This document shows positions 7,207 to 22,866 of a DNA stretch of 64,000 nt, piece by piece. The stretch is from IMG/VR virus record IMGVR_UViG_3300024259_002152, positions 186,001 through 250,000 of that record; one strand, 5' to 3'. The notes beneath the pieces are model-generated. The model made no database searches, was not told the origin of the DNA, and worked only from the letters and a program-made list of their open reading frames with translations. Position 1 is the first letter of the stretch, and each line of letters starts with the position of its first letter. A program made the translations under genes and the position numbers.

Positions 7207-7620
7207 ATGAAAAATAAAAAAATAGTATTTACTAACGGATGTTTCGATATTATTCATAGAGGTCATATTGACTATTTAGAAGAAGCAAAAAAATTGGGAG
7301 ATATTCTTCTAATAGGTTTGAATAGTGATGAATCAGTGAGAAAATTAAAAGGTGAAAATAGACCTATTAATAATGAAGAGGATAGAAAAAAAGTTTTACT
7401 GGCTTTGAAAAGTGTAGATGAGGTTATTATTTTTAATGAGGAAGACCCCTTAGAATTAGTAAAACAAATAAAACCAGATGTCATTGTCAAGGGGGGCGAT
7501 TGGAAAATAGAAAATATGATTGGTGCTGATTTTGTGATAGAAAATGGAGGAGAAGCATATTCTTTACCTTTCTATGATGGATATTCAACTACTAACATAT
7601 TGAATAAAATGAAAGATTAA
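7207..7620 (+). CDS. rfaE2: Stand-alone D-glycero-beta-D-manno-heptose 1-phosphate adenylyltransferase (HldE C-terminal/RfaE2 type)
   Basis: VFTNGCFDIIHRGH, GLNSDESVRKLKGENRPIN, VKGGDW, YSTTNI. Confidence 0.92.
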   Translation: MKNKKIVFTNGCFDIIHRGHIDYLEEAKKLGDILLIGLNSDESVRKLKGENRPINNEEDRKKVLLALKSVDEVIIFNEEDPLELVKQIKPDVIVKGGDWKIENMIGADFVIENGGEAYSLPFYDGYSTTNILNKMKD

Positions 7621-7663
7621 ATATGAATATTTTTATTGTTGATTGTTATGGAGGTTATTTATA

Positions 7664-8599
7664 ATGAATATATTAATAGGCACACATCCTTTTGGTCAGT
7701 GTGGAGAATTGCCAGTTAAACTGTTAAAAGAAACTGGATGGAATATAAAATATAATCCATTGGGGAGAAGATTAGAAGGTGATGAAGTAAAGGGTATGCT
7801 AAAAGGAATAGATGCTGTAATAGCTGGTACTGAACCTTATAATAAGGATACTATCCAATATGCTAAAGATTTGAAAGTTATTTCTAGAGCTGGTGTAGGA
7901 TTAGATAGTGTGGATTGTGAAGCATGTAAACAAAATAGAATTCAAGTAGCATACACTCCAGAAGCTCCGTCTGATTCCGTAGCAGATTTAACTATTGCTC
8001 AAATTTTTAATTTATTAAGGGGTTTACATCTTGCCAATCAATCGGCTAAAGATGGCGAGTGGGAAAGAATATTAGGTCTTTCTATTAAGCAGATTAATGT
8101 TGGGATACTAGGAGTGGGTAGAATAGGGGGTAGAGTTATTAATAGATTGAAACCTTTTGGTGCTAATATATTGGCTTGCGATATTGCTCCTAATAAGGAT
8201 ATAGATGGGGTTACATGGGTTGATAAAGAGGTTTTATTTGCGGAAAGCGATTTAATTTCTATTCATATTCCTTTGAATGAGGAAAATTATCATTTTATAA
8301 GCTCCAAAGAATTTGACATGATGAAAAAAGGAGCTTACATAATTAACACTTCGAGAGGTAGTATTATTAGAGAATCAGATCTTGAATCGTGTCTTGCAAA
8401 TAATCATTTGGCAGGAGCAGCATTAGATGTTTTTGAGAATGAACCTTATAGCGGGGTAATGCAAGACATGGACAATGTAATATTAACTGCTCATCTTGGA
8501 GCGTCCGATAGACGTTCGAAATACCTGATGGAATTAGGGGCAGTTGAGAATTGTGTAAATCTTCTTAGTGGTAATATTATTAAAGATATAGTTATATAA
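7664..8599 (+). CDS. D-isomer-specific 2-hydroxyacid dehydrogenase (SerA-like, no ACT domain)
   Basis: ISRAGVGLDSVD, GILGVGRIG, INTSRG, ALDVFENEP, TAHLG; GGAGG SD before ATG 7664. Confidence 0.88.
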   Translation: MNILIGTHPFGQCGELPVKLLKETGWNIKYNPLGRRLEGDEVKGMLKGIDAVIAGTEPYNKDTIQYAKDLKVISRAGVGLDSVDCEACKQNRIQVAYTPEAPSDSVADLTIAQIFNLLRGLHLANQSAKDGEWERILGLSIKQINVGILGVGRIGGRVINRLKPFGANILACDIAPNKDIDGVTWVDKEVLFAESDLISIHIPLNEENYHFISSKEFDMMKKGAYIINTSRGSIIRESDLESCLANNHLAGAALDVFENEPYSGVMQDMDNVILTAHLGASDRRSKYLMELGAVENCVNLLSGNIIKDIVI

Positions 8600-8630: not shown

Positions 8631-9620
8631 ATGAATATTCTTATAACGGGGATCACTGGTTTTGTTGGTAGTCATCTAGCAGATTATTTATTAAAAGAAA
8701 CGGATGCGATGATACATGGTTTAACGAGATGGAGATCTCCAAAGGAGAATATTCTCCATTTGGTTGATCATGATAGAATTGTTTTAGAACATGGCGATTT
8801 AACTGATTTTTCTTCTTTATATAGAATTATTAAAAATGTCAGACCAAATTATATATTTCATTTAGCGGCTCAGTCTTATGTTCCATATAGTTTTAATGTC
8901 CCAGCAGCTACTTTAGATTCTAACGTAGTTGGCACTTGTAATTTGTTAGAGGTTATCAAGCTTGTAAAAATAGATGATGGTTATGACCCAATAGTGCATA
9001 TTTGTTCGTCTTCTGAAGTATATGGCCAAGTGAGAGAAGAAGATATTCCTATTAAAGAAGATTGTCCTTTTAGACCAGCTTCTCCTTATGCTGTTAGTAA
9101 AACAGGAGAAGATATGCTTGGGTTACAATACTGGGTATCATGGAACATCAAGACAATTAGAACAAGAATGTTTACGCATACTGGTCCACGAAGGGGAGAT
9201 GTTTTTGTAGTCGCTGCCTTTGCAAAACAAATAGCTAAAATAGAGGAGGGATTACAAAAACCTATTATTAAAGTAGGTAATTTAGATAGCGTAAGAACTT
9301 TTGCAGATGTACGAGATACTGTTAAGGCATATTGGTTACTTGTGAATAAATGTGATCCTGGAGATGTTTATAATATAGGTGGAAACATCACGATGACTAT
9401 CAGAGACATGTTGACGATGCTGCTTAATAAATCTTATAAATTAAAAGATATTAAAATAGAAGTTGATCCTAATCTTCTTAGACCTTCTGATGTTACATTA
9501 CAAGTTCCATGTGTTGATAAATTTGTAAATAAAACAGGATGGAAACCAGAAATAGAATTTGATAAAACATTACAAGATACTCTTGATTTTTGGAGAGAAT
9601 GCTGGAGAAGAAATGTGTAA
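8631..9620 (+). CDS. gmd: GDP-mannose 4,6-dehydratase/Rmd-like SDR
   Basis: ITGITGFVGSHL, HLAAQSYV, SSSEVYG, PASPYAVSK, RMFTHTGPRRG. Confidence 0.85.
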   Translation: MNILITGITGFVGSHLADYLLKETDAMIHGLTRWRSPKENILHLVDHDRIVLEHGDLTDFSSLYRIIKNVRPNYIFHLAAQSYVPYSFNVPAATLDSNVVGTCNLLEVIKLVKIDDGYDPIVHICSSSEVYGQVREEDIPIKEDCPFRPASPYAVSKTGEDMLGLQYWVSWNIKTIRTRMFTHTGPRRGDVFVVAAFAKQIAKIEEGLQKPIIKVGNLDSVRTFADVRDTVKAYWLLVNKCDPGDVYNIGGNITMTIRDMLTMLLNKSYKLKDIKIEVDPNLLRPSDVTLQVPCVDKFVNKTGWKPEIEFDKTLQDTLDFWRECWRRNV

Positions 9621-10563
9621 ATTTGTAGAATTTTATAAGAAAATGTATCTTATTAGAAAAGTAGAAGATATAATAAGAGATAACTACTATGACGATGAGA
9701 TGAAGACACCTATGCATATGTCAAAAGGTTCTGAGGCAATTGCTGTAGGAGTTTGCTCAGCATTAGGGAATAGAGGGCAATATTTTTCAACATATCGTTC
9801 TCATGCCCCATATTTAGCAAGCGGCGGGAACCTTAATGAATTTTTTGCAGAAATGTATGGGAAAAAAGAGGGGAAATACGCAGGGAAAGCTGGGTCAATG
9901 CACATAGCTTCTCCTAGTACTGGGCACATCTCTTCTTCTGCCATTGTCGCAAGTAATATTCCTGTAGCTGTTGGTGCAGCTTGGGCTAATAAAATACAGG
10001 ATAATGGGAAGATAGTAGTTGTATTTTTTGGAGATGGTGCGTTGGATGAGGGTGGTTTTTGGGAGAGTATCAACATGGCTTGTTTATGGAAACTTCCTAT
10101 AATTTTTGTATGTGAAGATAATAGGTTGGCGGTTCATACTCCTTCTTCTGAAAGGCAAGGATATAATGATATAATAAATGTTGTAAATAATTTTAAAATG
10201 AATACGATTTCTTGTAGCGGATTAGAAGTAGATTTTGTTGAATGTCAATCCAAAAAAGCCATCATGAGCATAGATACAAATGAGTTTCCATTTTTTTTAC
10301 GATTTAGTTATTTTAGATATTTAGAGCATGTCGGGGTAAATTCTGATCTAAAAGAAAGTTATAGAGAAAAAGACTCATGGTGGTTATATGGTGATGATGT
10401 TGATCCTGTTTCGATTATGAGGTGTAAATTAATTGACATGAATATAGATATTAAGAGTATTGAAGATCAGATTTCGAAAAAAGTTAATGCATCTCTTGAT
10501 TTTGCTAAAAATGATGAATTTTCAGATATAAGTGAAGTTTATAAGGATGTGTTTTATGGCTAA
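9613..10563 (+). CDS. ThDP-dependent dehydrogenase E1 alpha-like subunit (sugar-cluster type)
   Basis: STYRSH, GSMH, FFGDGALDEGGFWESINMA...VCEDN, RYLEHVG. ATG 9613 overlaps the gmd stop. Confidence 0.88.
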   Translation: MCKFVEFYKKMYLIRKVEDIIRDNYYDDEMKTPMHMSKGSEAIAVGVCSALGNRGQYFSTYRSHAPYLASGGNLNEFFAEMYGKKEGKYAGKAGSMHIASPSTGHISSSAIVASNIPVAVGAAWANKIQDNGKIVVVFFGDGALDEGGFWESINMACLWKLPIIFVCEDNRLAVHTPSSERQGYNDIINVVNNFKMNTISCSGLEVDFVECQSKKAIMSIDTNEFPFFLRFSYFRYLEHVGVNSDLKESYREKDSWWLYGDDVDPVSIMRCKLIDMNIDIKSIEDQISKKVNASLDFAKNDEFSDISEVYKDVFYG

Positions 10564-11602
10564 AATAAAAACTACTTTTAAAGATGCTATTAATCTTGCT
10601 CTTATTCAGGAGATGGAGAGGGATAAAACCGTTTTCATATATGGTATAGGAGTGCCTGACCATAAAAAGATTTTTGGGACAACTGCTAATTTGGTCGAGA
10701 AATTTGGAAAAAATAGATGTTTTGATACTCCTCTATCAGAAGACGCTCTTACTGGCATGGCATTAGGAGCAGCTCTTAACGGAATGAGACCTATTCTTGT
10801 GCATATGAGAGTAGATTTTTCTTTGCTCGCTATGAATCAATTAATAAATCAAATATCAGCTTTTAGATATATTTCTAATGGAGCATTTAAAGTTCCTATT
10901 GTCATAAGAAATATTATAGGAAGAGGGTGGGGGCAGGGTAGTCAGCATACTAAAACTATGCAATCTTTATTTGCTCATATTCCTGGTTTAAAAGTTGTTA
11001 TGCCAACTACTATAGAAGATGCTAAGGGGCTTACAGCAGCCGCTATAAGAGATAATAATCCAGTTATGCTTATGGAGCATAGATGGTTATATTTTCAAGA
11101 AGGAGAGGTCGAAGAAGAGCCATTTGTACTGCCTCTTAATGAAGCTAGTAAAATAAGAGATGGAAAAGATGTGACAATAGTAGCCACTTCGTGGATGAAT
11201 GTAGAGGCATTGAAAGCATCTGAGGTTATGGCTAGACGAGGAATTGAAGTTGAAATTATTGATGCACGATGCATATCGTCGGTAGATATGAGGACTATTA
11301 GTAGATCTATTCGTAAAACAGGTAGATGTATTATAGCAGATTATGATTGGGTACATTGTGGTTTTAGTGCTGAGTTAGCGGCTCAAATATATCATAAATG
11401 TATAAGTTCTTTGACCGAAAGGGTAGTTAGAATGGGTTTTATTCACACTCCGTGTCCTACTGCAAGACATTTGGAAAATGAATTTTATCCTAGTGCGATA
11501 AACATTATTAAGGAAATAGAAGATTTGTTTGATTTGGAAGAAATTAATCTAGATGGAGAAGAATTTTATAGTTATGAGAAAAAGTTTAAGGGGCCTTTTT
11601 AA
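10556..11602 (+). CDS. ThDP-dependent dehydrogenase E1 beta-like subunit
   Basis: RCFDTPLSE, GRGWGQGSQH, HIPGLKVVMP, GKDVTIVA. Confidence 0.88.
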   Translation: MAKIKTTFKDAINLALIQEMERDKTVFIYGIGVPDHKKIFGTTANLVEKFGKNRCFDTPLSEDALTGMALGAALNGMRPILVHMRVDFSLLAMNQLINQISAFRYISNGAFKVPIVIRNIIGRGWGQGSQHTKTMQSLFAHIPGLKVVMPTTIEDAKGLTAAAIRDNNPVMLMEHRWLYFQEGEVEEEPFVLPLNEASKIRDGKDVTIVATSWMNVEALKASEVMARRGIEVEIIDARCISSVDMRTISRSIRKTGRCIIADYDWVHCGFSAELAAQIYHKCISSLTERVVRMGFIHTPCPTARHLENEFYPSAINIIKEIEDLFDLEEINLDGEEFYSYEKKFKGPF

Positions 11603-12369
11603 TGTTGGAAGATAAGTGCAAATGGTTAAGAGGAGAGATTCTAAATATTCTCATGAGATCTGGGAAGGGACATGTTGGAGGTGCTCTTTCTTGCGTCGAA
11701 ATATTAATATCTCTTTATTATGGGGGTCTTATTGCTGGGGATAATAAGTTTATTCTTAGTAAAGGGCATGTGTCGATAGCTCTTTATCCTATTCTTCATG
11801 ATTTGGGCTATATCAGTGATGAAGATTACAAAGGATGTTATATGAATGGAAATGTGTTAGGGGGACATCCAGATATCAACATCAACGGAATAGAATTTGA
11901 CACTGGTTCATTAGGTCATGGTCTTGGTGTTGCTTGCGGTATGGCAATTGCCAATAAAAATAGGGATGTATACGTATTAATGGGAGATGGGGAGTGTAAC
12001 GAGGGTTCTGTGTGGGAATCTGTTTTATTCGCTGCCAAGCATAAATTAAATAATATTGTTTTAATTATAGATAAGAATAATATTTGTGCTACAGATTTTC
12101 TTAAAAATGCTTGTCCTTTGCGACAATTGAGCGGTCGTCTTCGTCAATGTGGGTGGGTTGTTGCCAATACTGATGGTCATGATGTAGAAAACATAATTTA
12201 CTCTATTAACATGCCAAAAAGGTTATGTTATGATCAACCATTGGCAATCATAGCCAAGACTATTAAAGGAAAAGGTATTTCTTATATGGAGAATAATCCA
12301 AAATGGCATCACGGGGTTCCAAGCAAAGAAGAGTTGGAGATAGCCAGGAGAGAGATAGATGGATCTTAG
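11602..12369 (+). CDS. Transketolase, N-terminal (ThDP-binding) subunit
   Basis: GHVGGALSCVEIL, FILSKGH, GGHP, TGSLGHGLG, GDGECNEGSVWE, TIKGKG. Confidence 0.92.
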   Translation: MLEDKCKWLRGEILNILMRSGKGHVGGALSCVEILISLYYGGLIAGDNKFILSKGHVSIALYPILHDLGYISDEDYKGCYMNGNVLGGHPDININGIEFDTGSLGHGLGVACGMAIANKNRDVYVLMGDGECNEGSVWESVLFAAKHKLNNIVLIIDKNNICATDFLKNACPLRQLSGRLRQCGWVVANTDGHDVENIIYSINMPKRLCYDQPLAIIAKTIKGKGISYMENNPKWHHGVPSKEELEIARREIDGS

Positions 12370-13303
12370 AGATGCTTTTTTTGATAGTTTATACAATTTA
12401 ATAAAAGATGATGATAATTTTTATTTTCTTACAGCAGATATGTGGGCATTTAGTCTGCAAAAGTTTAAAGACAAATTAAATGACAGATTTATAAATGTTG
12501 GTATAGCTGAGCAAAATATGATTAGTGTAGCAGCAGGTCTTGCCCAAGAAGGTAAAAAAGTATGTGTTTATACTATTACTCCATTTGTAACAGAAAGATG
12601 TTTTGAGCAAATTAAGGTTGATTTATGTTGTATGAATTTGCCAGTTATGATTGTTGGAATTGGCTCTGGTTTGACTTATAGTTATGACGGACCGACTCAC
12701 CATACACCATATGATATATCTTTAATGAGATCACTTCCTAATTTATCTATATATAGCCCTTCGACTCCGTTAGTTAATAAATATGTTGCAGAAATAGCAT
12801 ATCGAAATGAAGGTCCTTCTTATATTAGACTAGATAAGGGGAATTTTGAAGATATTTATGATAGTATTCCTTCTCAACAATCCATTGGTATTTTAGGTCC
12901 CTTAGAACCAGAATCTGATTTAGCTATTATGACTACTGGTTCTATAATTTATGAAGTAATAAAAATGATTCCATTTTTAAATCAGGATAAAGGGATTAAT
13001 ACAACTTTGACTGATATCTATCAAATCAAACCTCTAGATGAAGGAAGGTTAGTTAAAATTATATCTGGTCATAAAAGAGTAGTCGTTATAGAGGAACATT
13101 CTTCTATAGGTGGTCTCGGAAGTATTGTGAGTGAAGTTATGATAGATCATAAACTTTATAAGCCATTGATGAAAATTTCTCTCCCTGATGAATTTTGCAA
13201 AAAATATGGAGATAGAAACTGGATAAGAGCAGAATACGGCTTAGATAGTAGTTCTATTATGAATAAAATAATCTGTACGGAGAATGATATTAGTGAGCAA
13301 TAA
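12359..13303 (+). CDS. Transketolase, C-terminal (pyrimidine-binding) subunit
   Basis: DRFINVGIAEQNM, GPTHH, GPSYIRL, VIEEH..GGLGS. Confidence 0.92.
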   Translation: MDLRDAFFDSLYNLIKDDDNFYFLTADMWAFSLQKFKDKLNDRFINVGIAEQNMISVAAGLAQEGKKVCVYTITPFVTERCFEQIKVDLCCMNLPVMIVGIGSGLTYSYDGPTHHTPYDISLMRSLPNLSIYSPSTPLVNKYVAEIAYRNEGPSYIRLDKGNFEDIYDSIPSQQSIGILGPLEPESDLAIMTTGSIIYEVIKMIPFLNQDKGINTTLTDIYQIKPLDEGRLVKIISGHKRVVVIEEHSSIGGLGSIVSEVMIDHKLYKPLMKISLPDEFCKKYGDRNWIRAEYGLDSSSIMNKIICTENDISEQ

Positions 13304-14231
13304 AATATATGATTTAACAGTAGGAGAGTTCTCTAAATTTTTTGGAATAAATAATGAAGAAATGCCACCTGAGTGTGTAGAGATTATTAATAAGCATGAT
13401 TTCAGATATACCTGTTGCAGTAAAATAGAAAGAGATAGGATAATACTAAATTTTGTAAAAAAAATGGATAATAAAATTTATTCACTGTCTGGAAAATATC
13501 AGGAGGAGAGATGGGAAAAGGGGTGGGGAGAGAATTTAAAAAACTTTGTAGAAAATGATTTCGATACTAAATTTTTAATTCCCAAATATAATAAGCAGTC
13601 TTCTTACATAGTTCTAAAAGGGGATTATGTCAAACCTGTTGATTTAAATTTTGAAATCAATTTTATAGAGTTAATTAGGGCTTTTGTATTTTATAGGTAT
13701 TTAAAAGATCAAAATAGTATTCATGAATTTGGATGTGGTTCTGCATATAATTTAGTAGCTTTCTCAGAGATAGATCCAGATAAACAATATTATGGATATG
13801 ATTGGGTTCAACAGTCTATTTCTATTATAGATGCAGTAAGAAAACATCTTGGACATAATGTCCATGGTTCCATTTTTAACATGTTTGATCCTAATCGTGA
13901 TTTGCAAATAAATGGAGGTGTTGCTCTGACCATAGGTGCTCTTGAGCAACTAGGCTCTGATCATCATAAATTTATCGATTTTTTATTGGATAAACCTTTT
14001 TCAAGATATGTTCATTTGAATTCGATATCTGAATTATATGATTCCGATAACAGTCTTGTTGATTATTTGATTCGTCGATTTGAAAAAAGTAGAAATTATT
14101 GTAACGGATTTTTTGGCAGATTGCGTAAGTTGGAGAAAGATGGTGTGATAAACATCTTAAAAATGCAGAAAGTGAGTTGCGGAAGTAAGTATGGAGACGT
14201 TTATTCAATTACAGTTTGGGAGAAAACTTAA
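13284..14231 (+). CDS. Putative SAM-dependent methyltransferase
   Basis: SIHEFGCGSAYNL...YYGYDW (motif I/II-like), LTIGALEQL. Confidence 0.55.
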   Translation: MILVSNKIYDLTVGEFSKFFGINNEEMPPECVEIINKHDFRYTCCSKIERDRIILNFVKKMDNKIYSLSGKYQEERWEKGWGENLKNFVENDFDTKFLIPKYNKQSSYIVLKGDYVKPVDLNFEINFIELIRAFVFYRYLKDQNSIHEFGCGSAYNLVAFSEIDPDKQYYGYDWVQQSISIIDAVRKHLGHNVHGSIFNMFDPNRDLQINGGVALTIGALEQLGSDHHKFIDFLLDKPFSRYVHLNSISELYDSDNSLVDYLIRRFEKSRNYCNGFFGRLRKLEKDGVINILKMQKVSCGSKYGDVYSITVWEKT

Positions 14232-15335
14232 ATGCGATATTCAGTAATAGGTGAAGACTTAGTACCATTAATAGGGCAGGGAGGATCTATTATAGGAGAA
14301 GATCCATCTATTAATTACGATAGGATTCTTAAAACTGGGATAGATAATGGTCTTACATTTATTGATACGGCAGAAGTTTATACGGGGGGAGAATCGGAAA
14401 AAATTATAGGTAGAGCTATCAGTAAATGTAGAGAAAAAGTTTTCATTTGTACTAAAGTCTCTCCAAATCATCTACTATTTAACGACATTATCTCTTCTGC
14501 CGATAATAGTTTAAGAAGACTTAATATTGATACTATTGATTTGTACAAAATTCATTGGCCTAATAATCTTTTGTGTCCCGATGATATATTAAGAGCATTT
14601 GATGATCTCCACAGACATGGCAAGGTAAGATATTTTGGGGTGAGTAATTTTTTACCAATGGATTTTGAGAAATTCAACACTAAAGATACTCGTTTCGGTT
14701 CATTCGTATCCAATCAGATAGAATATAATTTATTTGATCGCTTTGCAGAAATAGGGATAATTCCATATTTTAAAAATAAAGATGTTAAAATAATTGCTTA
14801 TTCTCCTTTAAATAGGGGAAATATTTGTTCCGATAGCGAAGAGATATTAAAAGAACTATCTGCAAAATACCATAAGACGCCAGCCCAAATATCACTAAAT
14901 TGGCTGGCATCTCATGATATTATTTCTGTTCCTTTTTCTTCTAATATAGATCATATAGTAGAGAATGCTACATCTTGTGATTTTGAAATTGATGAACAAG
15001 ATATGGATTTAATTAATAAAGAAGTAAAGGGAAAATTGTTATTTAAAAAAGTATCTGAGATTCAAGTTGCTAAAAACGGTTTTGGAGGTCATAAGGTATA
15101 TAATACAAAGGAAGAGGCATTAGAAAATAGATATAATTTTTGTCCCAGTCCTAGGGATATATCAGATTATTTATTGTCTTTAAGTCGAGAAGAATTGAAT
15201 TATATTAAACCAGTTAGAGTTATGGATGAGAATGGAGTTTTGAATCTTATAGAAGGAAGAGTAAGATATTGGGGATGGAATATAGCTTTTGGAGATGATA
15301 TTCTCCTCCCCGTTTATATTGTAAAGAAAGGTTAA
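14232..15335 (+). CDS. Aldo/keto reductase with a ~100-aa C-terminal extension
   Basis: FIDTAEVY, TKVSP, IDLYKIHWP, GKVRYFGVSNF, NQIEYNL, AYSPL; the extension contains LIEGRVRYW. Confidence 0.85.
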   Translation: MRYSVIGEDLVPLIGQGGSIIGEDPSINYDRILKTGIDNGLTFIDTAEVYTGGESEKIIGRAISKCREKVFICTKVSPNHLLFNDIISSADNSLRRLNIDTIDLYKIHWPNNLLCPDDILRAFDDLHRHGKVRYFGVSNFLPMDFEKFNTKDTRFGSFVSNQIEYNLFDRFAEIGIIPYFKNKDVKIIAYSPLNRGNICSDSEEILKELSAKYHKTPAQISLNWLASHDIISVPFSSNIDHIVENATSCDFEIDEQDMDLINKEVKGKLLFKKVSEIQVAKNGFGGHKVYNTKEEALENRYNFCPSPRDISDYLLSLSREELNYIKPVRVMDENGVLNLIEGRVRYWGWNIAFGDDILLPVYIVKKG

Positions 15336-16096
15336 TGATGGATAATACTGAGTTGGGTGCTAAGGTATATTCTGATAAAGATGAATTAGAAGCAAGGTCA
15401 AAAATAGTTAAATTATTAAAAGAATGTCCTATTCCAAACGATGAGATATTAGATAATTTAGGATTATTTCTTACTTCTAAAAATCTGTCAAGGATATTTT
15501 TTATGAATCATATTTACAAGCAGATTGTGGATGTCCCAGGGGTTGTTTTAGATATGGGAACAAGGTTTGGTAATAATATGTGTTTATTTTCAACTTTTAG
15601 AAGTATGTACGAGCCATTTCATAGACATAGAAAGGTTATAGGTTTCGATACTTTTGACGGTTTTCCAGAAGTAACTAAAGAAGATGGGAATTCTAATTTG
15701 ATGGAAAGGGGGAATTTAAAAGTGGGAGAAAAATATTACAGTTATCTTAATAATATTTTGGAAAATAAAAAATTAAACGAGCCTCTTCCTCATATCAAAA
15801 AATATAATTTAATAAAAGGAAATGCTATTGAAAAGTTAGGTGAATATCTTGAAAAACATCCTCAAACTATCATCGCATTGGCATATTTTGATTTCGATTT
15901 ATACAAACCGACCAAGATGTGTCTAGAAATGATAAGGTCGTTTATTACTAAGGGATCGATTTTAGCTTTCGACGAATTAAATGATGAAGATTCTCCTGGA
16001 GAAACTGTGGCTCTGAAAGAAGTATTTGGTTTGGAAAATATTAGATTAAAAAGAATATCAAATGTATCTAGGGCTTCTTATTTTGTTGTGGAGTAA
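15335..16096 (+). CDS. TylF/MycF-like sugar O-methyltransferase
   Basis: PGVVLDMGTRFG, IGFDTFDGFP, FDFDLYKPT, GSILAFDEL. Confidence 0.78.
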   Translation: MMDNTELGAKVYSDKDELEARSKIVKLLKECPIPNDEILDNLGLFLTSKNLSRIFFMNHIYKQIVDVPGVVLDMGTRFGNNMCLFSTFRSMYEPFHRHRKVIGFDTFDGFPEVTKEDGNSNLMERGNLKVGEKYYSYLNNILENKKLNEPLPHIKKYNLIKGNAIEKLGEYLEKHPQTIIALAYFDFDLYKPTKMCLEMIRSFITKGSILAFDELNDEDSPGETVALKEVFGLENIRLKRISNVSRASYFVVE

Positions 16097-17053
16097 ATGG
16101 TAAATTTTAGAAGAGGAAAGTATGTTGTTTTTGGAGGTTCTGGGCTTATAGGGACATCTGTTCTGTCTTTGTTGAAAGATAAAGATGGGATTGATGTGGT
16201 GTCTACTTATTTTCAAAATACTCCAAAAGTATTAGCGAAGAATATTTACCATGTTCAGAAAGATTTAAGAGGATGCTCTTGCGATGACATATTGTATGGT
16301 GCCGATTATGTCATTCTCTTGGCCTCTAATATAGTTCTTCCATCTTTATCTGAGAAAGAAATTATTAATAAAAATACCGATAATTTGGTTATAACATCTA
16401 GGGTTCTAGAATCTTGTTATCAAGCGAAAATCAAAAGGGTGGTCTGGGCCAGTAGCACTACTGGATTTCCAGACAAAAATGGGAAACTAAAAGAAGAAGA
16501 GATGTTCGTTGGGGACCCAATAGATAAATATTTTTACCTTGGATGGGTGAATAGGTTTATGGAAAAGGTTTGTTTATTTTATGCTAATAAGATCAAACAT
16601 AAAATGAGAATTTCAATTATAAGACCTACTTGCGTATATGGGGAGAATGAGGGGTTTAATTCCGATAAGTGTCATATGCTTCCGACTATGGTAAAAAAAA
16701 TCATAGATGGAGAGCATATAACAATATGGGGAAACGGAGAAAAAATAGTTGATCTTATTCATGCGGACGATGTTGCCGAGATATGTGTTTTGCTATTAGA
16801 TTCGTCTAATGATTTTCAAGTTTTTAATATTGGCACAGGTAAATATTATAGTGTTAATGATATTATAGACATTATTTGTAAGCTAGAGAATATAAATGAC
16901 TTGTCCATTGATAGGGTTGAAACAGAAAAACTGGATAGTAGCAGATTATTTTCTGTGGAAAAGATGGAAAAAGAAATAAAATTTACTCCTCGTATTGGTA
17001 TTGATAGTGGCATAAAAAGATTAATTAGTGAGTATAAAAAACATCATGGTTAA
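16097..17053 (+). CDS. NAD-dependent epimerase/reductase (GDP-fucose-synthase-like SDR), paralogue 1
   Basis: FGGSGLIG, IRPTCVYG, HMLPTMV, WGNG; the YxxxK position reads LGWVN. Confidence 0.8.
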   Translation: MVNFRRGKYVVFGGSGLIGTSVLSLLKDKDGIDVVSTYFQNTPKVLAKNIYHVQKDLRGCSCDDILYGADYVILLASNIVLPSLSEKEIINKNTDNLVITSRVLESCYQAKIKRVVWASSTTGFPDKNGKLKEEEMFVGDPIDKYFYLGWVNRFMEKVCLFYANKIKHKMRISIIRPTCVYGENEGFNSDKCHMLPTMVKKIIDGEHITIWGNGEKIVDLIHADDVAEICVLLLDSSNDFQVFNIGTGKYYSVNDIIDIICKLENINDLSIDRVETEKLDSSRLFSVEKMEKEIKFTPRIGIDSGIKRLISEYKKHHG

Positions 17054-18374
17054 AATAAGTTTCATAGTGCCGACATGGCAATATTTTTCGAATCCATTTA
17101 AGTTGCAGCCGTTACTGGAATTATATTTTTCTACAATAATTAGAGAAGAATTTTCCTCAGATTCTATTTTAATTGATATTATAGATCTTAGAGATTATAG
17201 AAAGCAAAAATTAGATGATGATAATTTAGATTATGATGTTTTTTGTGATTCTATTATACCGCAAAGAGATATCTATTTTTATTGGAGTCCTAAAACTGCC
17301 GATTTTTATGAAGTTGAAAGAGTAGTTAAACTATTAAGGGATAAATATCCAGAGTCTAAACATGTAGCTGGTGGAACTCATGTGGACAATTTTATAGAAG
17401 AATGTTCTTTAATTTTTGATGCAGTAGTAAATGGCCCAGGAGATAGAAGTTTTAGTAGATATATAGATGATTATATTAATGGTTTGACATCTAAAGTTTA
17501 TAAGGACGATTGGAAAGATGTGCATTATAAGGATTTCCCATTTCCAAAAAGAGATTTTTTGCCATTATCATCAATAGTTAATAGAGAGTTATTTACAGAA
17601 TATGGAGGTCTTCTCGGGACTTCTGTATTATTCTCGAGAGGTTGCCCTTTTCAATGTAAATTTTGTGTTTACAATATCCCCAATCGTTTGCAAACTAAAA
17701 CTCCTGGGGATATAAAAGCAGAGATTAATTATTTGAAAGATAATTATCATGTTGAGGCTATTAATGTAAGAGACGAAATGTGTATCGGAATGTCTGAAAA
17801 AATATATATTCCGTTTCTTCATGCTATAGGTGATAGTGACGTGGTGTGGAGGGGTCAAACAAGGGTTGGCATAAATAATAATCTTATATCTTTGGCCAAG
17901 GATAGTGGCTGTGTTGAATTGGTTCTCGGAGTGGAGAGTGTGTGTCAAAATGTTTTAGATGGTATAAATAAAAATCAAACCATCGAACAGTCTATTGATA
18001 CTATTAGATATTGTAAAGAAGTCGATATTAAGACAAGGATAAATTTAATATTAGGATTGCCTGGAGAGCCTCTCGACATTGTGGATAGAACCATTAAATT
18101 TTTTGAGGATTATAAGCCCAATTATGTTAGTATTTCTGGGTTGTGTCCTGTGCCAGGATCTGATATATTTAAGAATCCGAAAAAATATGGAATAAAATAC
18201 ATAGATCGTGATTGGAGCAAGCATTCTCATCTAATGTTTCGATATGGGGAGGATGAAGAGGGTGGATTACCATTCGAATACGATGATATTGAAAACTCTT
18301 TTTCCAGAAAAGAAATAATTGCGAATATAAAGGTATTGCAGGAATATTTGAGGCAAAATAATATGTCCTATTAA
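17046..18374 (+). CDS. B12-binding radical SAM protein 1
   Basis: VAGGTH in the N-terminal domain, SRGCPFQCKFC (CxxxCxxC), LGVES, ILGLPGE, PVPGS. Confidence 0.85.
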   Translation: MVKISFIVPTWQYFSNPFKLQPLLELYFSTIIREEFSSDSILIDIIDLRDYRKQKLDDDNLDYDVFCDSIIPQRDIYFYWSPKTADFYEVERVVKLLRDKYPESKHVAGGTHVDNFIEECSLIFDAVVNGPGDRSFSRYIDDYINGLTSKVYKDDWKDVHYKDFPFPKRDFLPLSSIVNRELFTEYGGLLGTSVLFSRGCPFQCKFCVYNIPNRLQTKTPGDIKAEINYLKDNYHVEAINVRDEMCIGMSEKIYIPFLHAIGDSDVVWRGQTRVGINNNLISLAKDSGCVELVLGVESVCQNVLDGINKNQTIEQSIDTIRYCKEVDIKTRINLILGLPGEPLDIVDRTIKFFEDYKPNYVSISGLCPVPGSDIFKNPKKYGIKYIDRDWSKHSHLMFRYGEDEEGGLPFEYDDIENSFSRKEIIANIKVLQEYLRQNNMSY

Positions 18375-18388
18375 GAAAGGTATATAAT

Positions 18389-19378
18389 ATGATTTCACAG
18401 GAAGTGTTAGAAAGTTTTGGAAGTAAATCTTGTTTAGTTACTGGAGGAACTGGGCTCATAGGCAGACAGGTGGTTAAAATATTATGTGATGCTGGTGCTA
18501 ATGTTACAATTATATCTTTAGATGATATCGATGTTGACAAAAGAGCTATACATTTGGCAGGAGACTTATGCGATTTTAATATTTGTAGGCAAATAACGGC
18601 AGGTAAGGATTATGTGTTTCATATAGCTGGGATAAAAGGATCAGTAAAAGTTACTAGGGAAAAACCATCTAGTTTTTTTGTTCCTTTACTTATGATGAAT
18701 ACCAATATTCTAGAAGCTTGTAGAATTAATAATGTTAAGAAGGTAGTATATACGAGTTCTGTAGGGGCTTATTCTAGCGCTGAGGTATTTAAAGAAGATG
18801 AGAACTTAACAGGAGAACCTATGGACTTGTTCCCTGGATGGGCTAAAAGAATGGCCGAAAAACAAATTGAATCATATGCTATTCAATATGGTTTAAAGAA
18901 CTTTGCAGTTGTTAGACCTGCTAATATATATGGGCCAGGAGACAACTTTGATCCAGATAATGCTATGGTTATTCCTACTCTTATGCAAAGAATATATAAG
19001 AAGGAAGATCCTGTAATTATTTGGGGAGATGGCTCTGCTATAAGGGATTTTGCTTATAGTAAAGATATTGCTGAGGGAATTGTTCAAGCTTTGTGTCATG
19101 GTACTGAAGGAAAATTTGTGAACCTTGGAAGTGGAAAAGGAGTCACAATCAGAGAATTAGTGGAGGCTCTTCATAGCTTTTTAGATTTTAATTATGAGTT
19201 TGATACTAGTAAACCTTCTGGTTTTCCTAGAAGGGTAATGGATATTTCTTTGGCTGAAAAGATGATATGTTACAACCCTTCAACGTCTTTAGTTGACGGG
19301 CTTAAAGAAACATGGGAGTGGTTCGTGAATAATGCCGATGAATATAAAAATAGAAAAAACTATTTTACGGAAGAATAA
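18389..19378 (+). CDS. NAD-dependent epimerase/reductase (GDP-fucose-synthase-like SDR), paralogue 2
   Basis: TGGTGLIG, FHIAG, VRPANIYGPGDNF, WGDGSAIRDF; the YxxxK position reads PGWAK. Confidence 0.85.
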   Translation: MISQEVLESFGSKSCLVTGGTGLIGRQVVKILCDAGANVTIISLDDIDVDKRAIHLAGDLCDFNICRQITAGKDYVFHIAGIKGSVKVTREKPSSFFVPLLMMNTNILEACRINNVKKVVYTSSVGAYSSAEVFKEDENLTGEPMDLFPGWAKRMAEKQIESYAIQYGLKNFAVVRPANIYGPGDNFDPDNAMVIPTLMQRIYKKEDPVIIWGDGSAIRDFAYSKDIAEGIVQALCHGTEGKFVNLGSGKGVTIRELVEALHSFLDFNYEFDTSKPSGFPRRVMDISLAEKMICYNPSTSLVDGLKETWEWFVNNADEYKNRKNYFTEE

Positions 19379-19379
19379 G

Positions 19380-19910
19380 ATGAAGGCAGAAAAAACGAAT
19401 TTACCAGGGGTTTTATTATTTGAACATGAGTGTTTTGAAGATCATCGTGGCACTTATGAAGAATTGTATAATAAAATCAAATTTGATGAAGTATGTCAAG
19501 AATATATTGGTTATACAATAAGTTTTTTAGAAACTAATATAGCATTATCTTCTAAACATGTGTTGAGAGGTATTCATGGAGATGACAGGACTTGGAAATA
19601 TGTAACTTGTTTAAAAGGAAAATATTTTATTAATGTTTTGTGTTATGATAAAGTATCTGAATATTATGGGAAGCACCAAAGTTTTGTTCTGAGCGAACAA
19701 AATAAGAAACAACTTCTTATACCTCCTCTCCATGGTCATGGTTATGTTGTTATGAGTGAGGAAGCCATTTTCTATTATCAACAATCTTGTACTTATAGAG
19801 GTATGGGAGAGCAATTTACCATTAGGTATAATGATGAAAGATTTAATATGTGGTGGCCTATTAAAAATCCAATTTTATCTCAAAGAGATGAGGCTGGAAA
19901 GGTGGTTTAG
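19380..19910 (+). CDS. rmlC: dTDP-4-dehydrorhamnose 3,5-epimerase family (cupin)
   Basis: FEDHRG, HVLRGIHG, LIPPLHGHGY, WPIKNPILSQRD; ATG 19380. Confidence 0.88.
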   Translation: MKAEKTNLPGVLLFEHECFEDHRGTYEELYNKIKFDEVCQEYIGYTISFLETNIALSSKHVLRGIHGDDRTWKYVTCLKGKYFINVLCYDKVSEYYGKHQSFVLSEQNKKQLLIPPLHGHGYVVMSEEAIFYYQQSCTYRGMGEQFTIRYNDERFNMWWPIKNPILSQRDEAGKVV

Positions 19911-19928
19911 TAAAAAAGAAAGGGAATT

Positions 19929-20891
19929 ATGTTTTTTAAAGATAAAAATATTTTAGTAACAGGGGCATCTGGATTTACGGGAACTAATCTTATTAAAAGA
20001 TTGCTAGAAGAAGGTTCTAATGTCAGGGGGGTATTGCATCATAAAGAACCTCAAACTGATTTTGATTCTAATAAAATTAGTTATATGTGGGGTGATTTAA
20101 CTAATAAAGAAGATTGCAAAAAAGTAGTAGATGGAATTGATTATGTTTTTATGTGCTCTGCAAATACATCTGGTGCGGCAGTTATGGAAAGTACCCCTTT
20201 GGCTCATGTTACTCCAAATGTGATTATGAACGCTTTAATGCTAGAAGCTGCTTATGAGGCAGGGGTAAAAAAGTTTATGTTTATGAGTAGTACGACCGTA
20301 TATCCTATTTCTGAATATCCTTTGAAAGAAGATGATATTAGTGACGAGTTTTATAGTAAATATTTTTTTGTTGGGTGGATGAAAAGATTTTCAGAAATTA
20401 TGTGTGAAATGTATGGCAGCAAAATCAAAAAACCAATGACAACAATAATAATTAGACCAGGGAATTTGTATGGAGATTATGATGATTATGAGTGGGATAC
20501 TTCTCATTCGACTGCTGCTTTAATTAGAAGGGTAGTAGAAAGACATGATCCATTGGTGGTTTGGGGAGATGGAAGTGATTTAAAAGATATTACTTATATC
20601 TCTGATTTGATTGATGGAATAATTACTTCTATGGAGAATATCGAAAAATTTACTATTATTAATATAGCTAGCGGTAAATCTTATAGTATTAAAGAAACAT
20701 TAAATACCATTCTGGAAGTAGATGGCTATACAGATGCTAATGTGGAATACGATTTAACTAAACCCACTATGATTCCTAAAAGATTGATAGATATAACTAA
20801 GGCGAAAGAGTTGATAGATTTTAAACCTAAATTTGATTTGAGGTCCGGTATAGAGAGGACCATAAAACATTATAGAGAAAATAATAAATAA
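19929..20891 (+). CDS. NAD-dependent epimerase/reductase (GDP-fucose-synthase-like SDR), paralogue 3
   Basis: TGASGFTG, IRPGNLYG, HSTAALIRR, WGDGS; the YxxxK position reads VGWMK. Confidence 0.85.
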   Translation: MFFKDKNILVTGASGFTGTNLIKRLLEEGSNVRGVLHHKEPQTDFDSNKISYMWGDLTNKEDCKKVVDGIDYVFMCSANTSGAAVMESTPLAHVTPNVIMNALMLEAAYEAGVKKFMFMSSTTVYPISEYPLKEDDISDEFYSKYFFVGWMKRFSEIMCEMYGSKIKKPMTTIIIRPGNLYGDYDDYEWDTSHSTAALIRRVVERHDPLVVWGDGSDLKDITYISDLIDGIITSMENIEKFTIINIASGKSYSIKETLNTILEVDGYTDANVEYDLTKPTMIPKRLIDITKAKELIDFKPKFDLRSGIERTIKHYRENNK

Positions 20892-20919
20892 TGGAAGAAT
20901 TTTTTAAAGGGCAAATAAT

Positions 20920-22764: not shown

Positions 22765-22866
22765 GGAACAAAAGTTTTTTTAAGAATGTTATCATAGATG
22801 AAATTAATTAGAGATTTATACATGGGCGATACAAAATAAACAAAAATATTTTTAATGGAGAATAAA

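What the first reader, a model, noticed from the sequence alone, without database searches (positions are those of the whole stretch)
8631..13303. Two split ThDP-dependent C-C enzymes next to Gmd: branched-chain or higher-carbon sugar pathway
Seen: gmd-like, E1-alpha-like, E1-beta-like, transketolase-N and transketolase-C genes are translationally coupled, with no E2/E3 lipoyl components in the window; a 2-hydroxyacid dehydrogenase, RmlC, an AKR and three SDRs lie nearby. Established: ThDP enzymes such as YerE add a pyruvate-derived acyl unit to NDP-4-keto-deoxysugars (yersiniose), followed by reduction. Inference: two different carbon-branching reactions make rare branched sugars, an elaborate pathway to find on a probable virus.
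Basis: partly seen in the sequence, partly recalled or inferred. Interest (0 to 1): 0.7.

Follow-up and report, generated by a model that had tools for sequence, protein, structure and literature searches.

The report
Phage operon for branched heptose sugars
A very large marine phage carries a heptose-modifying operon with two thiamine-dependent enzyme pairs that most likely add two-carbon units to a keto sugar. The same module recurs in glycan loci of many uncultured bacteria, archaea and other phages.

Summary
Five translationally coupled genes at 8631-13303 encode an SDR 4,6-dehydratase, E1-alpha, E1-beta, TK-N and TK-C. The whole 350,866-base viral contig has no E2 or lipoyl protein.

- **The "Gmd":** it is closest to the solved GDP-D-glycero-D-manno-heptose 4,6-dehydratase. 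An HldC-type heptose-1-phosphate adenylyltransferase lies two genes upstream.
- **E1-beta:** it falls in a well-supported clade that sits next to heptose-type dehydratases and never next to E2/E3. This clade and a sister sugar clade carry a C-terminal F-x-G-P-F tail that housekeeping E1-beta lacks.
- **The split TK:** it keeps the cofactor and catalytic residues. It has Gly where canonical transketolases have a phosphate-binding His, as do all 128 relatives examined.
- **Context of TK relatives:** every context inspected is an NDP-sugar tailoring cluster.
- **Tandem ThDP pairs after the dehydratase:** these recur as E1+TK, E1+E1 or TK+TK in Omnitrophota, Levybacteria, Desulfuromonadaceae, Gemmatimonadota and about 25 other viral contigs.
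- **Closest precedents:** these are not YerE. They are the alpha-KADH2 E1 pairs and the untested split transketolases of actinomycete antibiotic sugars.

The chemistry remains inferred.

The parts
7207..7620 (+). HldC / RfaE domain II-type D-glycero-beta-D-manno-heptose 1-phosphate adenylyltransferase (137 aa)
   Evidence: TIGR02199 scores 202.5 bits, above the curated cut-off of 181.5. Pfam CTP_transf_like.
7643..8599 (+). D-isomer 2-hydroxyacid dehydrogenase, PGDH/glyoxylate-reductase-like. It may supply a 2-oxo-acid donor such as hydroxypyruvate (inferred).
   Evidence: PF02826 and PF00389. Below all NCBIfam cut-offs. A homologue accompanies the module in L001, L003 and L005.
8631..9620 (+).
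   Evidence: Best solved relative is 7us5, GDP-D-glycero-D-manno-heptose 4,6-dehydratase: 302 bits against about 165 for Gmd. The SSSE and YxxxK motifs are aligned. Homologues of 45-80% identity sit beside clade-A E1 pairs.
9613..10563 (+). E1-alpha-like ThDP subunit (316 aa)
   Evidence: PF00676. The GDG...N cofactor motif and the active-site His are kept; the phosphorylation Ser is replaced by Val. The start overlaps the dehydratase stop.
10556..11602 (+). E1-beta-like subunit (348 aa) with a C-terminal FKGPF tail
   Evidence: PF02779 and PF02780. The cofactor-activating Glu and the active-site His are kept. It lies in clade A of the tree. The tail is present in 22 of 23 clade A rows, 35 of 43 clade B rows and 0 of 23 housekeeping rows.
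11602..12369 (+). Split transketolase-like protein, N-terminal (ThDP-binding) half
   Evidence: PF00456. Best PDB match is the N-terminal chain of a split transketolase, 6yak. The equivalents of His26, His66, His100, His261, Asp155 and Asn185 are kept.
12359..13303 (+). Split transketolase-like protein, C-terminal (Pyr plus C) half, with an altered phosphate pocket
   Evidence: PF02779 and PF02780. Glu411, Asp469, His473 and Arg358 are kept. His461 is Gly, Ser385 is Phe and Arg520 is Lys. The predicted complex with TK-N gives weak support: ipSAE 0.56 against 0.00 for the best control.
13284..14231 (+). Divergent class I SAM methyltransferase-like protein that travels with the module
   Evidence: No Pfam family passes. 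Atlas structure matches have TM 0.7-0.95 to methyltransferase clusters. Homologues occur in L003, L019, L025, L027, L101 and L116.
14232..15335 (+). Aldo-keto reductase, candidate reductase of the newly added keto branch (a YerF analogue; inferred)
   Evidence: PF00248. An AKR or a short-chain ketoreductase follows the ThDP pairs in most related loci.
15335..16096 (+). TylF/MycF/NovP-like sugar O-methyltransferase
   Evidence: Atlas matches by features and by structure have TM 0.94-0.97 to TylF clusters. Homologues of 53-60% identity occur in L003, L022, L027, L099 and L122-L127.
16097..22305 (+). Further tailoring genes: SDR 16097-17053; radical SAM 17028-18374; GDP-fucose-synthase-like SDR 18389-19378; RmlC-like 3/3,5-epimerase 19332-19910; SDR 19929-20891; B12-radical SAM 20920-22305
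   Evidence: Pfam. The RmlC-like protein's top PDB matches are GDP-4-keto-heptose epimerases. The two SDRs tested against the PDB (18389-19378 and 19929-20891) match GDP-fucose synthase and other NDP-sugar epimerases; the SDR at 16097-17053 has only Pfam/NCBIfam evidence. These genes are conserved with the module.

Best explanation
The five coupled genes are the core of an NDP-heptose tailoring pathway inside a phage glycan locus of at least 46 kb.

Proposed steps:
1. A heptose nucleotide is formed, fed by the phage HldC from host heptose-1-phosphate.
2. The SDR 4,6-dehydratase converts it to a 4-keto-6-deoxy-heptose nucleotide.
3. The E1-alpha/beta pair works without E2 or E3 as a carboligase. 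It decarboxylates a 2-oxo acid, most simply pyruvate, and adds the ThDP-bound C2 unit to the sugar ketone. The product is a tertiary alcohol carrying an acetyl branch.
4. The split transketolase-like pair performs a second C2 transfer. The unit would be hydroxyacetyl, taken from hydroxypyruvate or a ketose. The acceptor would be a keto intermediate of the same pathway.
5. The AKR and SDRs reduce the new ketones. The epimerase, methyltransferases and radical SAM enzymes finish the sugar.
6. Soluble phage glycosyltransferases use the product, probably on phage or host proteins.

Shown: gene content, catalytic residues, phylogenetic separation from housekeeping enzymes, and conserved synteny. Inferred: acceptor, donors, order of steps, product and target.
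For: **Heptose link.** The dehydratase's best solved relative is a GDP-heptose 4,6-dehydratase. HldC scores above its curated cut-off two genes upstream. Cellular relatives of the module carry GmhA, GmhB, a GHMP kinase and an NTP-transferase.

**E1 pair.**
- Catalytic residues are intact, and the contig has no E2 or lipoyl protein.
- The tree of 89 E1-beta rows places the window in a 23-row clade (SH-aLRT 98). Sixteen of those rows have a heptose-type dehydratase within 9 kb and none has E2/E3. All 8 E2/E3 contexts fall in a separate clade with support 100.
- The F-x-G-P-F tail is specific to the sugar-linked clades.
- A ketoreductase or AKR usually follows the E1 pair.

**TK pair.**
- All inspected contexts of relatives are sugar-tailoring clusters.
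- Gly replaces the phosphate-binding His in 128 of 128 relatives.
- Three genomes that hold a cluster-type TK also hold a full-length transketolase with all four phosphate-binding residues.
- L099 has the order NTP-transferase, dehydratase, TK pair, TK pair. L101, L027 and L116 have dehydratase, E1 pair, TK pair. L022 and L023 have two E1 pairs.

**Published precedent.** E1 alpha/beta pairs add a pyruvate-derived C2 branch to NDP-keto sugars (PMC4802897; PMC12247030). Split transketolases have been proposed to transfer a hydroxyacetyl group to a keto sugar (PMC12247030).
Against: - There is no biochemical evidence for any member of these clades.
- The contig lacks GmhA, a heptose kinase and an HddC-type transferase, so the substrate depends on the host. 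Its nucleotide (ADP or GDP) is unknown.
- The dehydratase resembles a GDP-sugar enzyme, whereas the adjacent nucleotidyltransferase is of the ADP-heptose type.
- The TK pair keeps Arg358, and Arg520 is usually Lys, so a phosphorylated substrate is not excluded.
- The locus census came from a pattern-based retrieval biased towards this subfamily, and the tree is a quick search.
- Characterised alpha-KADH2 and miharamycin TK sequences could not be included.
- No RNA run was listed.
Confidence: 0.6

Rival explanations
1. The E1 pair branches the NDP-keto-heptose as above. The split TK, however, works on sugar phosphates upstream. It would supply sedoheptulose-7-phosphate or build a longer ketose phosphate (octulose or nonulose) that is then activated. 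On this reading there is one branching step plus a chain-supply step.
For: Transketolase is the normal source of sedoheptulose-7-phosphate, the heptose precursor. Arg358, Asp469 and His473 are kept, and position 520 stays basic. Many related clusters carry a GHMP kinase, an NTP-transferase and a SIS isomerase.
Against: - The phage has no GmhA or kinase to use such a product.
- The phosphate-binding His461 and Ser385 are lost in all 128 relatives, while housekeeping TKs in the same genomes keep them.
- TK pairs are interchangeable in position with E1 pairs directly after the dehydratase (L099, L022, L023).
- TK pairs are followed by ketoreductases or AKRs.
Confidence: 0.15
2. The ThDP enzymes do not add carbon to the sugar. 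Instead they cleave a carbon-carbon bond next to the sugar ketone, in the manner of acetoin cleavage, or they make a small acyl or ketol unit that ends up as an O- or N-linked substituent.
For: Some homologues are auto-annotated as acetoin:DCPIP oxidoreductase. Related E1 pairs with the same C-terminal tail also occur in non-sugar secondary-metabolite contexts, for example the S. griseofuscus plasmid.
Against: There is no acyl carrier, CoA ligase or acyltransferase next to the pairs in the window. The constant partner is the 4,6-dehydratase, with a downstream reductase. That matches the published ThDP-then-reductase branching scheme (PMC9306805).
Confidence: 0.1
3. These are ordinary auxiliary metabolic genes. 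The phage would boost host pyruvate oxidation and the pentose phosphate pathway, as cyanophages do with transaldolase.
For: Domain-level resemblance to PDH E1 and to transketolase. The phage is marine.
Against: - All four proteins score below the curated cut-offs for PDH E1 and transketolase.
- There is no E2 or E3.
- E1-beta branches apart from E2/E3-linked enzymes.
- The TK phosphate pocket is altered.
- The genes are translationally coupled inside a sugar-tailoring operon.
Confidence: 0.04
4. The contig is not viral, or it is a chimera. On this reading the operon is simply a cellular glycan locus.
For: The same module is common in cellular MAGs. No Terminase_6N match was found. CheckV completeness is only 73%.
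Against: - It is an IMG/VR virus record with a cluster of 31 tRNAs.
- A clamp loader, a processivity factor and strong PHROG matches lie in the same window, on the same strand and with the same composition.
- Syntenic loci occur on viral contigs of 219 and 548 kb and on unclassified contigs of 276 and 386 kb.
Confidence: 0.05

Closest known systems
Alpha-KADH2-type E1 alpha/beta carboligases of antibiotic deoxysugar pathways (aldgamycin, avilamycin AviB1/B2, paulomycin Plm8/Plm9, kosinostatin, kibdelomycin KbDH-alpha/beta)
   Same: A two-subunit PDH-E1-like ThDP enzyme with no E2/E3, encoded beside NDP-sugar 4,6-dehydratase genes. It is proposed, and for KbDH shown in vitro, to add a pyruvate-derived C2 unit to a sugar ketone. 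The branch is often then reduced or methylated (PMC12247030; PMC4802897).
   Different: - The known cases are actinomycete secondary-metabolite clusters acting on 6-deoxy or 2,6-dideoxy hexoses.
- This one is in a marine phage and in surface-glycan-like loci of many uncultured phyla.
- It is linked to a heptose-type dehydratase and paired in tandem with a second ThDP enzyme.
- Sequence relationship to the characterised members was not tested.
Split-gene transketolases proposed for the hydroxyacetyl branch of miharamycin and amipurimycin
   Same: A transketolase split into N and C genes, inside a sugar-tailoring cluster, proposed to use a keto sugar as acceptor (PMC12247030).
   Different: The review counts 13 such sequences, all from Streptomyces and none tested in vitro. 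Here the family is large (128 relatives examined) and phylogenetically wide. It is linked to heptose genes and is marked by Gly at the phosphate-binding His position.
YerE/YerF and the 'unifying scheme' for acyl-branched LPS sugars (yersiniose, erwiniose, caryophyllose)
   Same: The logic is the same: a keto-sugar nucleotide, then ThDP carboligation with a 2-oxo acid, then NAD(P)H reduction, with optional methylation. An aldolase sometimes supplies a longer donor (PMC9306805). An HpcH-type aldolase accompanies the module in L001 and L003.
   Different: YerE-like enzymes are single-chain members of the AHAS-like decarboxylase superfamily and act on CDP-3,6-dideoxy-4-keto-glucose. The window enzymes have E1 and transketolase folds and no AHAS-like domains.
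Campylobacter jejuni capsule heptose-modification enzymes (GDP-heptose 4,6-dehydratase, 3- and 3,5-epimerases, C4 reductases)
   Same: The dehydratase is closest to 7us5. The RmlC-like protein's top solved matches are GDP-4-keto-heptose epimerases. The SDRs are GDP-fucose-synthase-like.
   Different: The C. jejuni pathways have no ThDP enzymes. They make 6-deoxy or epimerised heptoses without new carbon-carbon bonds (my own knowledge). Here the adjacent nucleotidyltransferase is of the ADP-heptose type.

Membership tests
Housekeeping 2-oxoacid dehydrogenase E1 alpha/beta (PDH, BCKDH, acetoin) | Works with a lipoyl-bearing E2 and an E3, usually encoded alongside | tested here: not met
   The whole contig has no PF00198 or PF00364 match, while the controls were positive. 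None of the 23 rows of the window's clade has E2 or E3 within 9 kb.
Housekeeping 2-oxoacid dehydrogenase E1 alpha/beta (PDH, BCKDH, acetoin) | Scores above the curated family cut-offs and branches with E2/E3-linked enzymes | tested here: not met
   E1-alpha scores 242 bits against a cut-off of 393.85. E1-beta scores 286.9 against 321. It lies in a separate clade, with support 98 and 100.
Alpha-KADH2-type sugar-branching E1 alpha/beta carboligases | Intact ThDP/Mg motif, cofactor-activating Glu and active-site His residues in a two-subunit enzyme | tested here: met
   The GDG...N motif and the alpha His are kept. The beta Glu and His are kept.
Alpha-KADH2-type sugar-branching E1 alpha/beta carboligases | Encoded within an NDP-sugar pathway beside the enzyme that makes the sugar ketone, with a downstream reductase | tested here: met
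   The genes are coupled to the 4,6-dehydratase. Sixteen of 23 clade rows have a heptose-type dehydratase within 9 kb. A ketoreductase or AKR follows in most loci.
Alpha-KADH2-type sugar-branching E1 alpha/beta carboligases | Groups by sequence with characterised members (AviB1/B2, Plm8/9, KbDH) | not tested
   Those sequences could not be obtained through the tools. Only an uncharacterised Streptomyces plasmid homologue with the same tail was seen.
Alpha-KADH2-type sugar-branching E1 alpha/beta carboligases | Pyruvate-dependent C2 addition to a keto sugar | not testable with these tools
   Needs an enzyme assay.
Canonical transketolase (EC 2.2.1.1) | ThDP/Mg binding and catalytic His, Glu and Asp residues | tested here: met
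   The equivalents of His26, His66, His100, His261, Asp155, Asn185, Glu411, Asp469 and His473 are kept.
Canonical transketolase (EC 2.2.1.1) | Sugar-phosphate pocket formed by Arg358, Ser385, His461 and Arg520 (E. coli numbering) | tested here: not met
   Arg358 is kept, but His461 is Gly, Ser385 is Phe and Arg520 is Lys. Gly at 461 occurs in 128 of 128 relatives. The solved split TK 6yaj keeps the His and the Arg520 equivalent. Full-length TKs of three genomes that carry a cluster-type TK keep all four residues.
Canonical transketolase (EC 2.2.1.1) | Scores above the curated NCBIfam transketolase cut-offs | tested here: not met
   TK-N scores 196 bits and TK-C 144 bits, against a cut-off of 488. 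These models cover the full-length enzyme, so each half is expected to score lower for that reason too.
Split-gene transketolases proposed for keto-sugar branching (miharamycin/amipurimycin type) | Split N and C genes inside a sugar-tailoring cluster that has a keto-sugar-forming enzyme | tested here: met
   The contexts of relatives are all sugar clusters.
Split-gene transketolases proposed for keto-sugar branching (miharamycin/amipurimycin type) | Sequence kinship with the Streptomyces members; hydroxyacetyl transfer to a ketone | not tested
GDP-mannose 4,6-dehydratase (Gmd) | Scores above the TIGR01472 cut-off, with Gmd as nearest characterised relative | tested here: not met
   It scores 186 bits against a cut-off of 415. 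True Gmd structures score about 145-165 bits, against 302 for the heptose dehydratase.
GDP-D-glycero-alpha-D-manno-heptose 4,6-dehydratase (C. jejuni type, 7us5) | Highest similarity to the solved enzyme, with the SDR dehydratase motifs and heptose-activation genes nearby | tested here: met
   It scores 302 bits over 324 residues, with SSSE and YxxxK aligned. HldC lies upstream. Heptose-activation genes lie beside homologues.
GDP-D-glycero-alpha-D-manno-heptose 4,6-dehydratase (C. jejuni type, 7us5) | Acts on a GDP-heptose substrate | tested here: inconclusive
   The adjacent transferase is of the ADP-heptose type. The contig has no HddC-like gene. Substrate specificity needs an assay.
YerE-like ThDP lyases | Single-chain AHAS-like decarboxylase-superfamily enzyme | tested here: not met
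   The main matches are to E1_dh, Transketolase_N, Transket_pyr and Transketolase_C. Only a weak local TPP_enzyme_C match covers the cofactor motif.

The most novel reading that the evidence does not exclude
A widely distributed but undescribed pathway uses two successive ThDP carboligations (E1+TK, E1+E1 or TK+TK) on an NDP-4-keto-6-deoxy-heptose to build a doubly C2-extended, branched higher sugar. Marine megaphages would carry it, together with nonulosonic-acid and Kdo-type activation genes, to decorate their own virions or to remodel host surface proteins with a glycan the host cannot make.
Probability: 0.3. Interest if true: 0.8.

Novelty: new variant of a known kind. Interest (0 to 1): 0.66.

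Why it matters
ThDP-dependent C-branching of keto sugars by E1 pairs and by split transketolases has so far been discussed only for actinomycete antibiotics. The transketolase case has never been tested in vitro (PMC12247030).

This study finds both enzyme types in tandem, tied to a heptose-type dehydratase. They occur in a marine megaphage, in about 25 other viral contigs, and in glycan loci of CPR bacteria, Omnitrophota, Nitrospira, Gemmatimonadota, Desulfuromonadaceae and archaea.

This gives:
- a large and easily cloned set of candidate ketone-accepting carboligases;
- two sequence markers to sort them from housekeeping enzymes, namely the E1-beta F-x-G-P-F tail and Gly at the transketolase His461 position;
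- a pointer to an unknown class of branched higher sugars on microbial and perhaps viral surfaces.

Tried and rejected
- **DNA search against GenBank phages:** a blastn search with the 4.7-kb region found nothing. A protein search with TK-C found only matches of 35% identity or less, mostly host-like fragments.
- **Heptose genes in the contig:** tblastn for GmhA, a GHMP kinase, an HddC-type transferase, DegT and an HpcH aldolase found only a distant GmhB/PNK-like phosphatase outside the window.
- **Terminase:** a Terminase_6N search of the contig was negative, so viral status rests on other evidence.
- **Expression:** no RNA sequencing run was listed.
- **Reads:** The second showed only short, low-depth contigs identical to the window. 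These confirm presence in several seawater samples but not long-range continuity.
- **Literature:** Krug et al. 2024, the in silico census of branching ThDP enzymes, is not held in the library.
- **Plasmid hits:** the Azospirillum hit lies in a sugar-like context of the sister clade type. The Streptomyces griseofuscus hit lies in a non-sugar metabolite cluster. Neither is a characterised enzyme.
- **Complex prediction:** TK-N with TK-C gave only weak support.
- **Fusion in L003:** the weak GT2-like match in the N-terminal extension of the 608-aa E1-alpha is below threshold and was not used as evidence.
- **Rejected readings:** the housekeeping/AMG reading and the YerE-family reading (see rivals and membership tests).

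Full report
**What is there.** The window is bases 186001-250000 of a single 350,866-base contig. The contig is held as an IMG/VR virus record, linear, with CheckV completeness 73%. It has about 32% G+C and almost all genes are on the + strand. A clamp loader, a processivity factor, a tRNA nucleotidyltransferase and a strong PHROG match lie downstream in the window. The contig also carries 31 clustered tRNA genes. The sequence is held by 24 seawater or marine metagenome runs, and short contigs identical to it occur in several samples. No RNA run was listed.

**The genes of the finding.** They are real and translationally coupled:
- dehydratase 8631-9620;
- E1-alpha 9613-10563 (ATGTGTAA overlap);
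- E1-beta 10556-11602 (ATGGCTAA overlap);
- TK-N 11602-12369 (TAATG overlap);
- TK-C 12359-13303 (11-nt overlap).

Neither an E2 catalytic domain nor a lipoyl domain occurs anywhere in the contig, while both searches rang in the control genomes.

**The surrounding locus.** It is much larger than the finding. Upstream it reaches at least 20 kb beyond the window start. That stretch holds two NeuB homologues, a CMP-sugar synthetase, a second 2-hydroxyacid dehydrogenase, GT4 and GT2 glycosyltransferases, FkbM methyltransferases, a B12-radical SAM enzyme and an MptE/Maf-like protein.

Inside the window, three genes pass curated NCBIfam cut-offs:
- NeuC, 105-1238;
- a KdsB-like cytidylyltransferase, 3311-4078;
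- an HldC/RfaE-domain-II heptose-1-phosphate adenylyltransferase, 7207-7620 (202.5 bits against a cut-off of 181.5).

Downstream of the TK pair lie a divergent methyltransferase-like protein, an AKR, a TylF-like O-methyltransferase, three SDRs, an RmlC-like epimerase and two radical SAM enzymes. No multi-pass membrane protein was detected among 76 ORFs across 64 kb of the locus. This fits soluble, cytoplasmic use of the sugars, but that reading is inference.

**The dehydratase.** It scores below the Gmd cut-off. Its best solved relative by a wide margin is the GDP-D-glycero-D-manno-heptose 4,6-dehydratase 7us5 (302 bits). True Gmd enzymes score about 165 bits, and the SDR dehydratase motifs are aligned. 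The RmlC-like protein's top solved matches are GDP-4-keto-heptose epimerases, though only marginally above dTDP RmlC. The SDRs resemble GDP-fucose synthase. With HldC two genes upstream, the scaffold is most likely a heptose nucleotide. The contig lacks GmhA, a heptose kinase and an HddC-type transferase, so it would draw on the host.

**The E1 pair.**
- *Residues.* The ThDP/Mg motif and the active-site His of the alpha subunit are conserved, as are the cofactor-activating Glu and the His of the beta subunit.
- *Relatives.* E1-beta has thousands of relatives at 60-85% identity in metagenomes.
- *Census.* I took 80 named GTDB loci plus metagenome loci and labelled them by BLAST with the window's own proteins and with E. 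coli AceF and Lpd. I then built a tree of 89 E1-beta rows.
- *Three clades.* The window sits in a 23-row clade (SH-aLRT 98). Sixteen of those rows have a heptose-type dehydratase (40% identity or more) within 9 kb. Four more have heptose-activation genes, the remaining three show no labelled neighbour, and none has E2/E3. All 8 E2/E3 contexts lie in a separate 23-row clade (support 100). A third clade of 43 rows is linked to SIS isomerase and HldC-like genes.
- *Taxa.* The window's clade spans Thermoplasmatales, Nanoarchaeota, Levybacteria, Staskawiczbacteria, Sungiibacteriota, Nitrospira, Gemmatimonadota, Anaerolineae and Proteobacteria.
- *A marker.* E1-beta ends in F-x-G-P-F in 22 of 23 rows of the window's clade and in 35 of 43 rows of the third, SIS/HldC-linked clade. 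None of the 23 housekeeping rows ends this way. The same ending occurs in two plasmid homologues without E2.
- *Downstream gene.* A short-chain ketoreductase or an AKR usually follows the E1 pair.

**The TK pair.**
- *Residues.* In E. coli TktA numbering, taken from the K-12 record, the N half keeps His26, His66, His100, His261, Asp155 and Asn185. The C half keeps Arg358, Glu411, Asp469 and His473. However, His461 is Gly, Ser385 is Phe and Arg520 is Lys.
- *Relatives.* Gly at position 461 holds in 128 of 128 relatives, and Ser385 in none.
- *Controls.* The solved, active split transketolase 6yaj keeps the His and the Arg. Three genomes that carry a cluster-type split TK also carry a full-length transketolase with all four phosphate-pocket residues.
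- *Contexts.* Every context I inspected for TK-C relatives at 44-66% identity is an NDP-sugar tailoring cluster.
- *Complex.* The prediction for TK-N with TK-C gave weak support. The ipSAE was 0.56, against 0.00 for the best of three controls. The partner pLDDT was at least 89, and the runs agreed in at least 1% of their contacts. That mark was reached by 51 of 78 solved complexes and 2 of 108 mismatched pairs, but scores of 0.60 or lower are rated weak.

**Synteny.** This is the strongest argument that both pairs act on the dehydratase product or its descendants.
- Omnitrophota L101, Levybacteria L027 and viral L116 have dehydratase, E1-alpha, E1-beta, TK-N, TK-C. The 548-kb viral contig (L003) has the same gene set, with one methyltransferase gene between the dehydratase and E1-alpha.
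- Desulfuromonadaceae L099 has NTP-transferase, dehydratase, TK pair, TK pair.
- Gemmatimonadota L022 and Reyranellaceae L023 have two E1 pairs.
- Several loci have E1 pair, ketoreductase, TK pair.
- The methyltransferase-like protein, AKR, TylF-like protein, SDRs and RmlC-like protein travel with them.
- Alignment-based scans of IMG/VR found about 25 further viral contigs of 9-548 kb with the dehydratase plus an E1 pair, a TK pair or both. No close relative exists among GenBank phage records.

**Mechanism proposed.**
1. The dehydratase makes an NDP-4-keto-6-deoxy-heptose.
2. The E1 pair, free of E2, decarboxylates pyruvate or another 2-oxo acid. It adds the C2 unit to the ketone, giving a tertiary alcohol.
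3. The TK-like pair transfers a hydroxyacetyl unit to a further keto intermediate. The donor would be hydroxypyruvate, which the adjacent 2-hydroxyacid dehydrogenase could supply, or a ketose.
4. The AKR and SDRs reduce the branches.
5. Methyltransferases and radical SAM enzymes finish the sugar.

This follows the published logic for branched sugars. E1 alpha/beta pairs are used in paulomycin, avilamycin, aldgamycin, kosinostatin and kibdelomycin (PMC4802897; PMC12247030). Split transketolases have been proposed for miharamycin and amipurimycin, but are untested in vitro and known only from 13 Streptomyces sequences (PMC12247030). The ThDP-then-reductase scheme applies to LPS sugars, sometimes with an aldolase (PMC9306805). 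An HpcH-type aldolase accompanies the module in two related unclassified or viral contigs. Gene content, residues, phylogeny and synteny are shown. The substrates, order of steps, product and glycosylation target are inferred.

**Caveats.**
- The locus census came from peptide-pattern retrieval centred on this subfamily.
- Context labels rest on BLAST to the window's proteins.
- Some 'none' contexts are short contigs.
- The tree was a quick search without an outgroup.
- Characterised natural-product enzymes could not be added.
- The nucleotide carried by the heptose is unresolved.

**Verdict.** It needs three corrections: heptose rather than mannose, alpha-KADH2 and split-TK precedents rather than YerE, and a widespread rather than unique module. 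I rate it a new variant of a known kind, with interest 0.66.

Noticed in passing
window 25544-26473 (repeat 25664-26120): An ORF of 309 aa holds about 30 tandem copies of a 15-nt unit (97% matches). The unit encodes the pentapeptide AVKKK, so the protein is extremely basic. It has no Pfam family. The gene lies directly after the glycan locus.
   Followed up: partly
G000 166001-186000 (L009) and window 1-26500: The glycan locus spans at least 46 kb. It holds two NeuB genes, NeuC, four CTP_transf_3 genes (one KdsB-like above its cut-off), HldC, several MptE/Maf-like proteins, GT4, GT2 and NodZ-like transferases, FkbM methyltransferases and three B12 or radical SAM enzymes. No multi-pass membrane protein was detected.
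   Followed up: partly
window 10556-11602 and E1-beta of loci L001-L097: E1-beta proteins in sugar or other non-E2 contexts end in a conserved F-x-G-P-F tail. The tail is absent from all E2/E3-linked E1-beta sampled, so it may mark E2-independent carboligase-type E1 enzymes.
   Followed up: yes
window 22855-23661 and 23664-24512: Two tandem paralogues resemble nucleotide-sugar dehydrogenases but are only 268 and 282 aa long. They match the N-terminal and central domains and lack the C-terminal domain. Both score below the curated cut-offs.
   Followed up: no
window 57354-59459: A 701-aa sensor histidine kinase (sCache, PAS, HisKA, HATPase) is encoded in the phage contig. A VWA-domain protein (59626-60243) and a C39-like peptidase (49993-50709) lie nearby.
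   Followed up: no
G000 327905-338016 (outside the window): A cluster of 31 tRNA genes covers most amino acids. An 837-aa tRNA nucleotidyltransferase-like protein lies at window 46035-48548.
   Followed up: no
L003 8172-9998: In the related 548-kb viral contig, E1-alpha is a 608-aa fusion. Its N-terminal extension of about 300 aa gives a weak, sub-threshold GT2-like match, which would fit a nucleotide-sugar-binding domain.
   Followed up: partly
L001 6618-7406; L003 3690-4472: Two related large contigs, one a classified viral contig (L003) and one an unclassified 386-kb metagenome contig (L001), carry an HpcH/HpaI-type aldolase, and L003 also a HAD phosphatase, between the KdsB-like/2-hydroxyacid dehydrogenase genes and the dehydratase. 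The window phage lacks the aldolase. It could supply longer 2-oxo-acid donors, as in the published scheme for long-branched sugars.
   Followed up: no
window 1867-2511 (- strand): This is the only sizeable minus-strand ORF in the locus. It fills a gap with no + strand ORF and gives a weak MptE-like match (E 7e-4).
   Followed up: no
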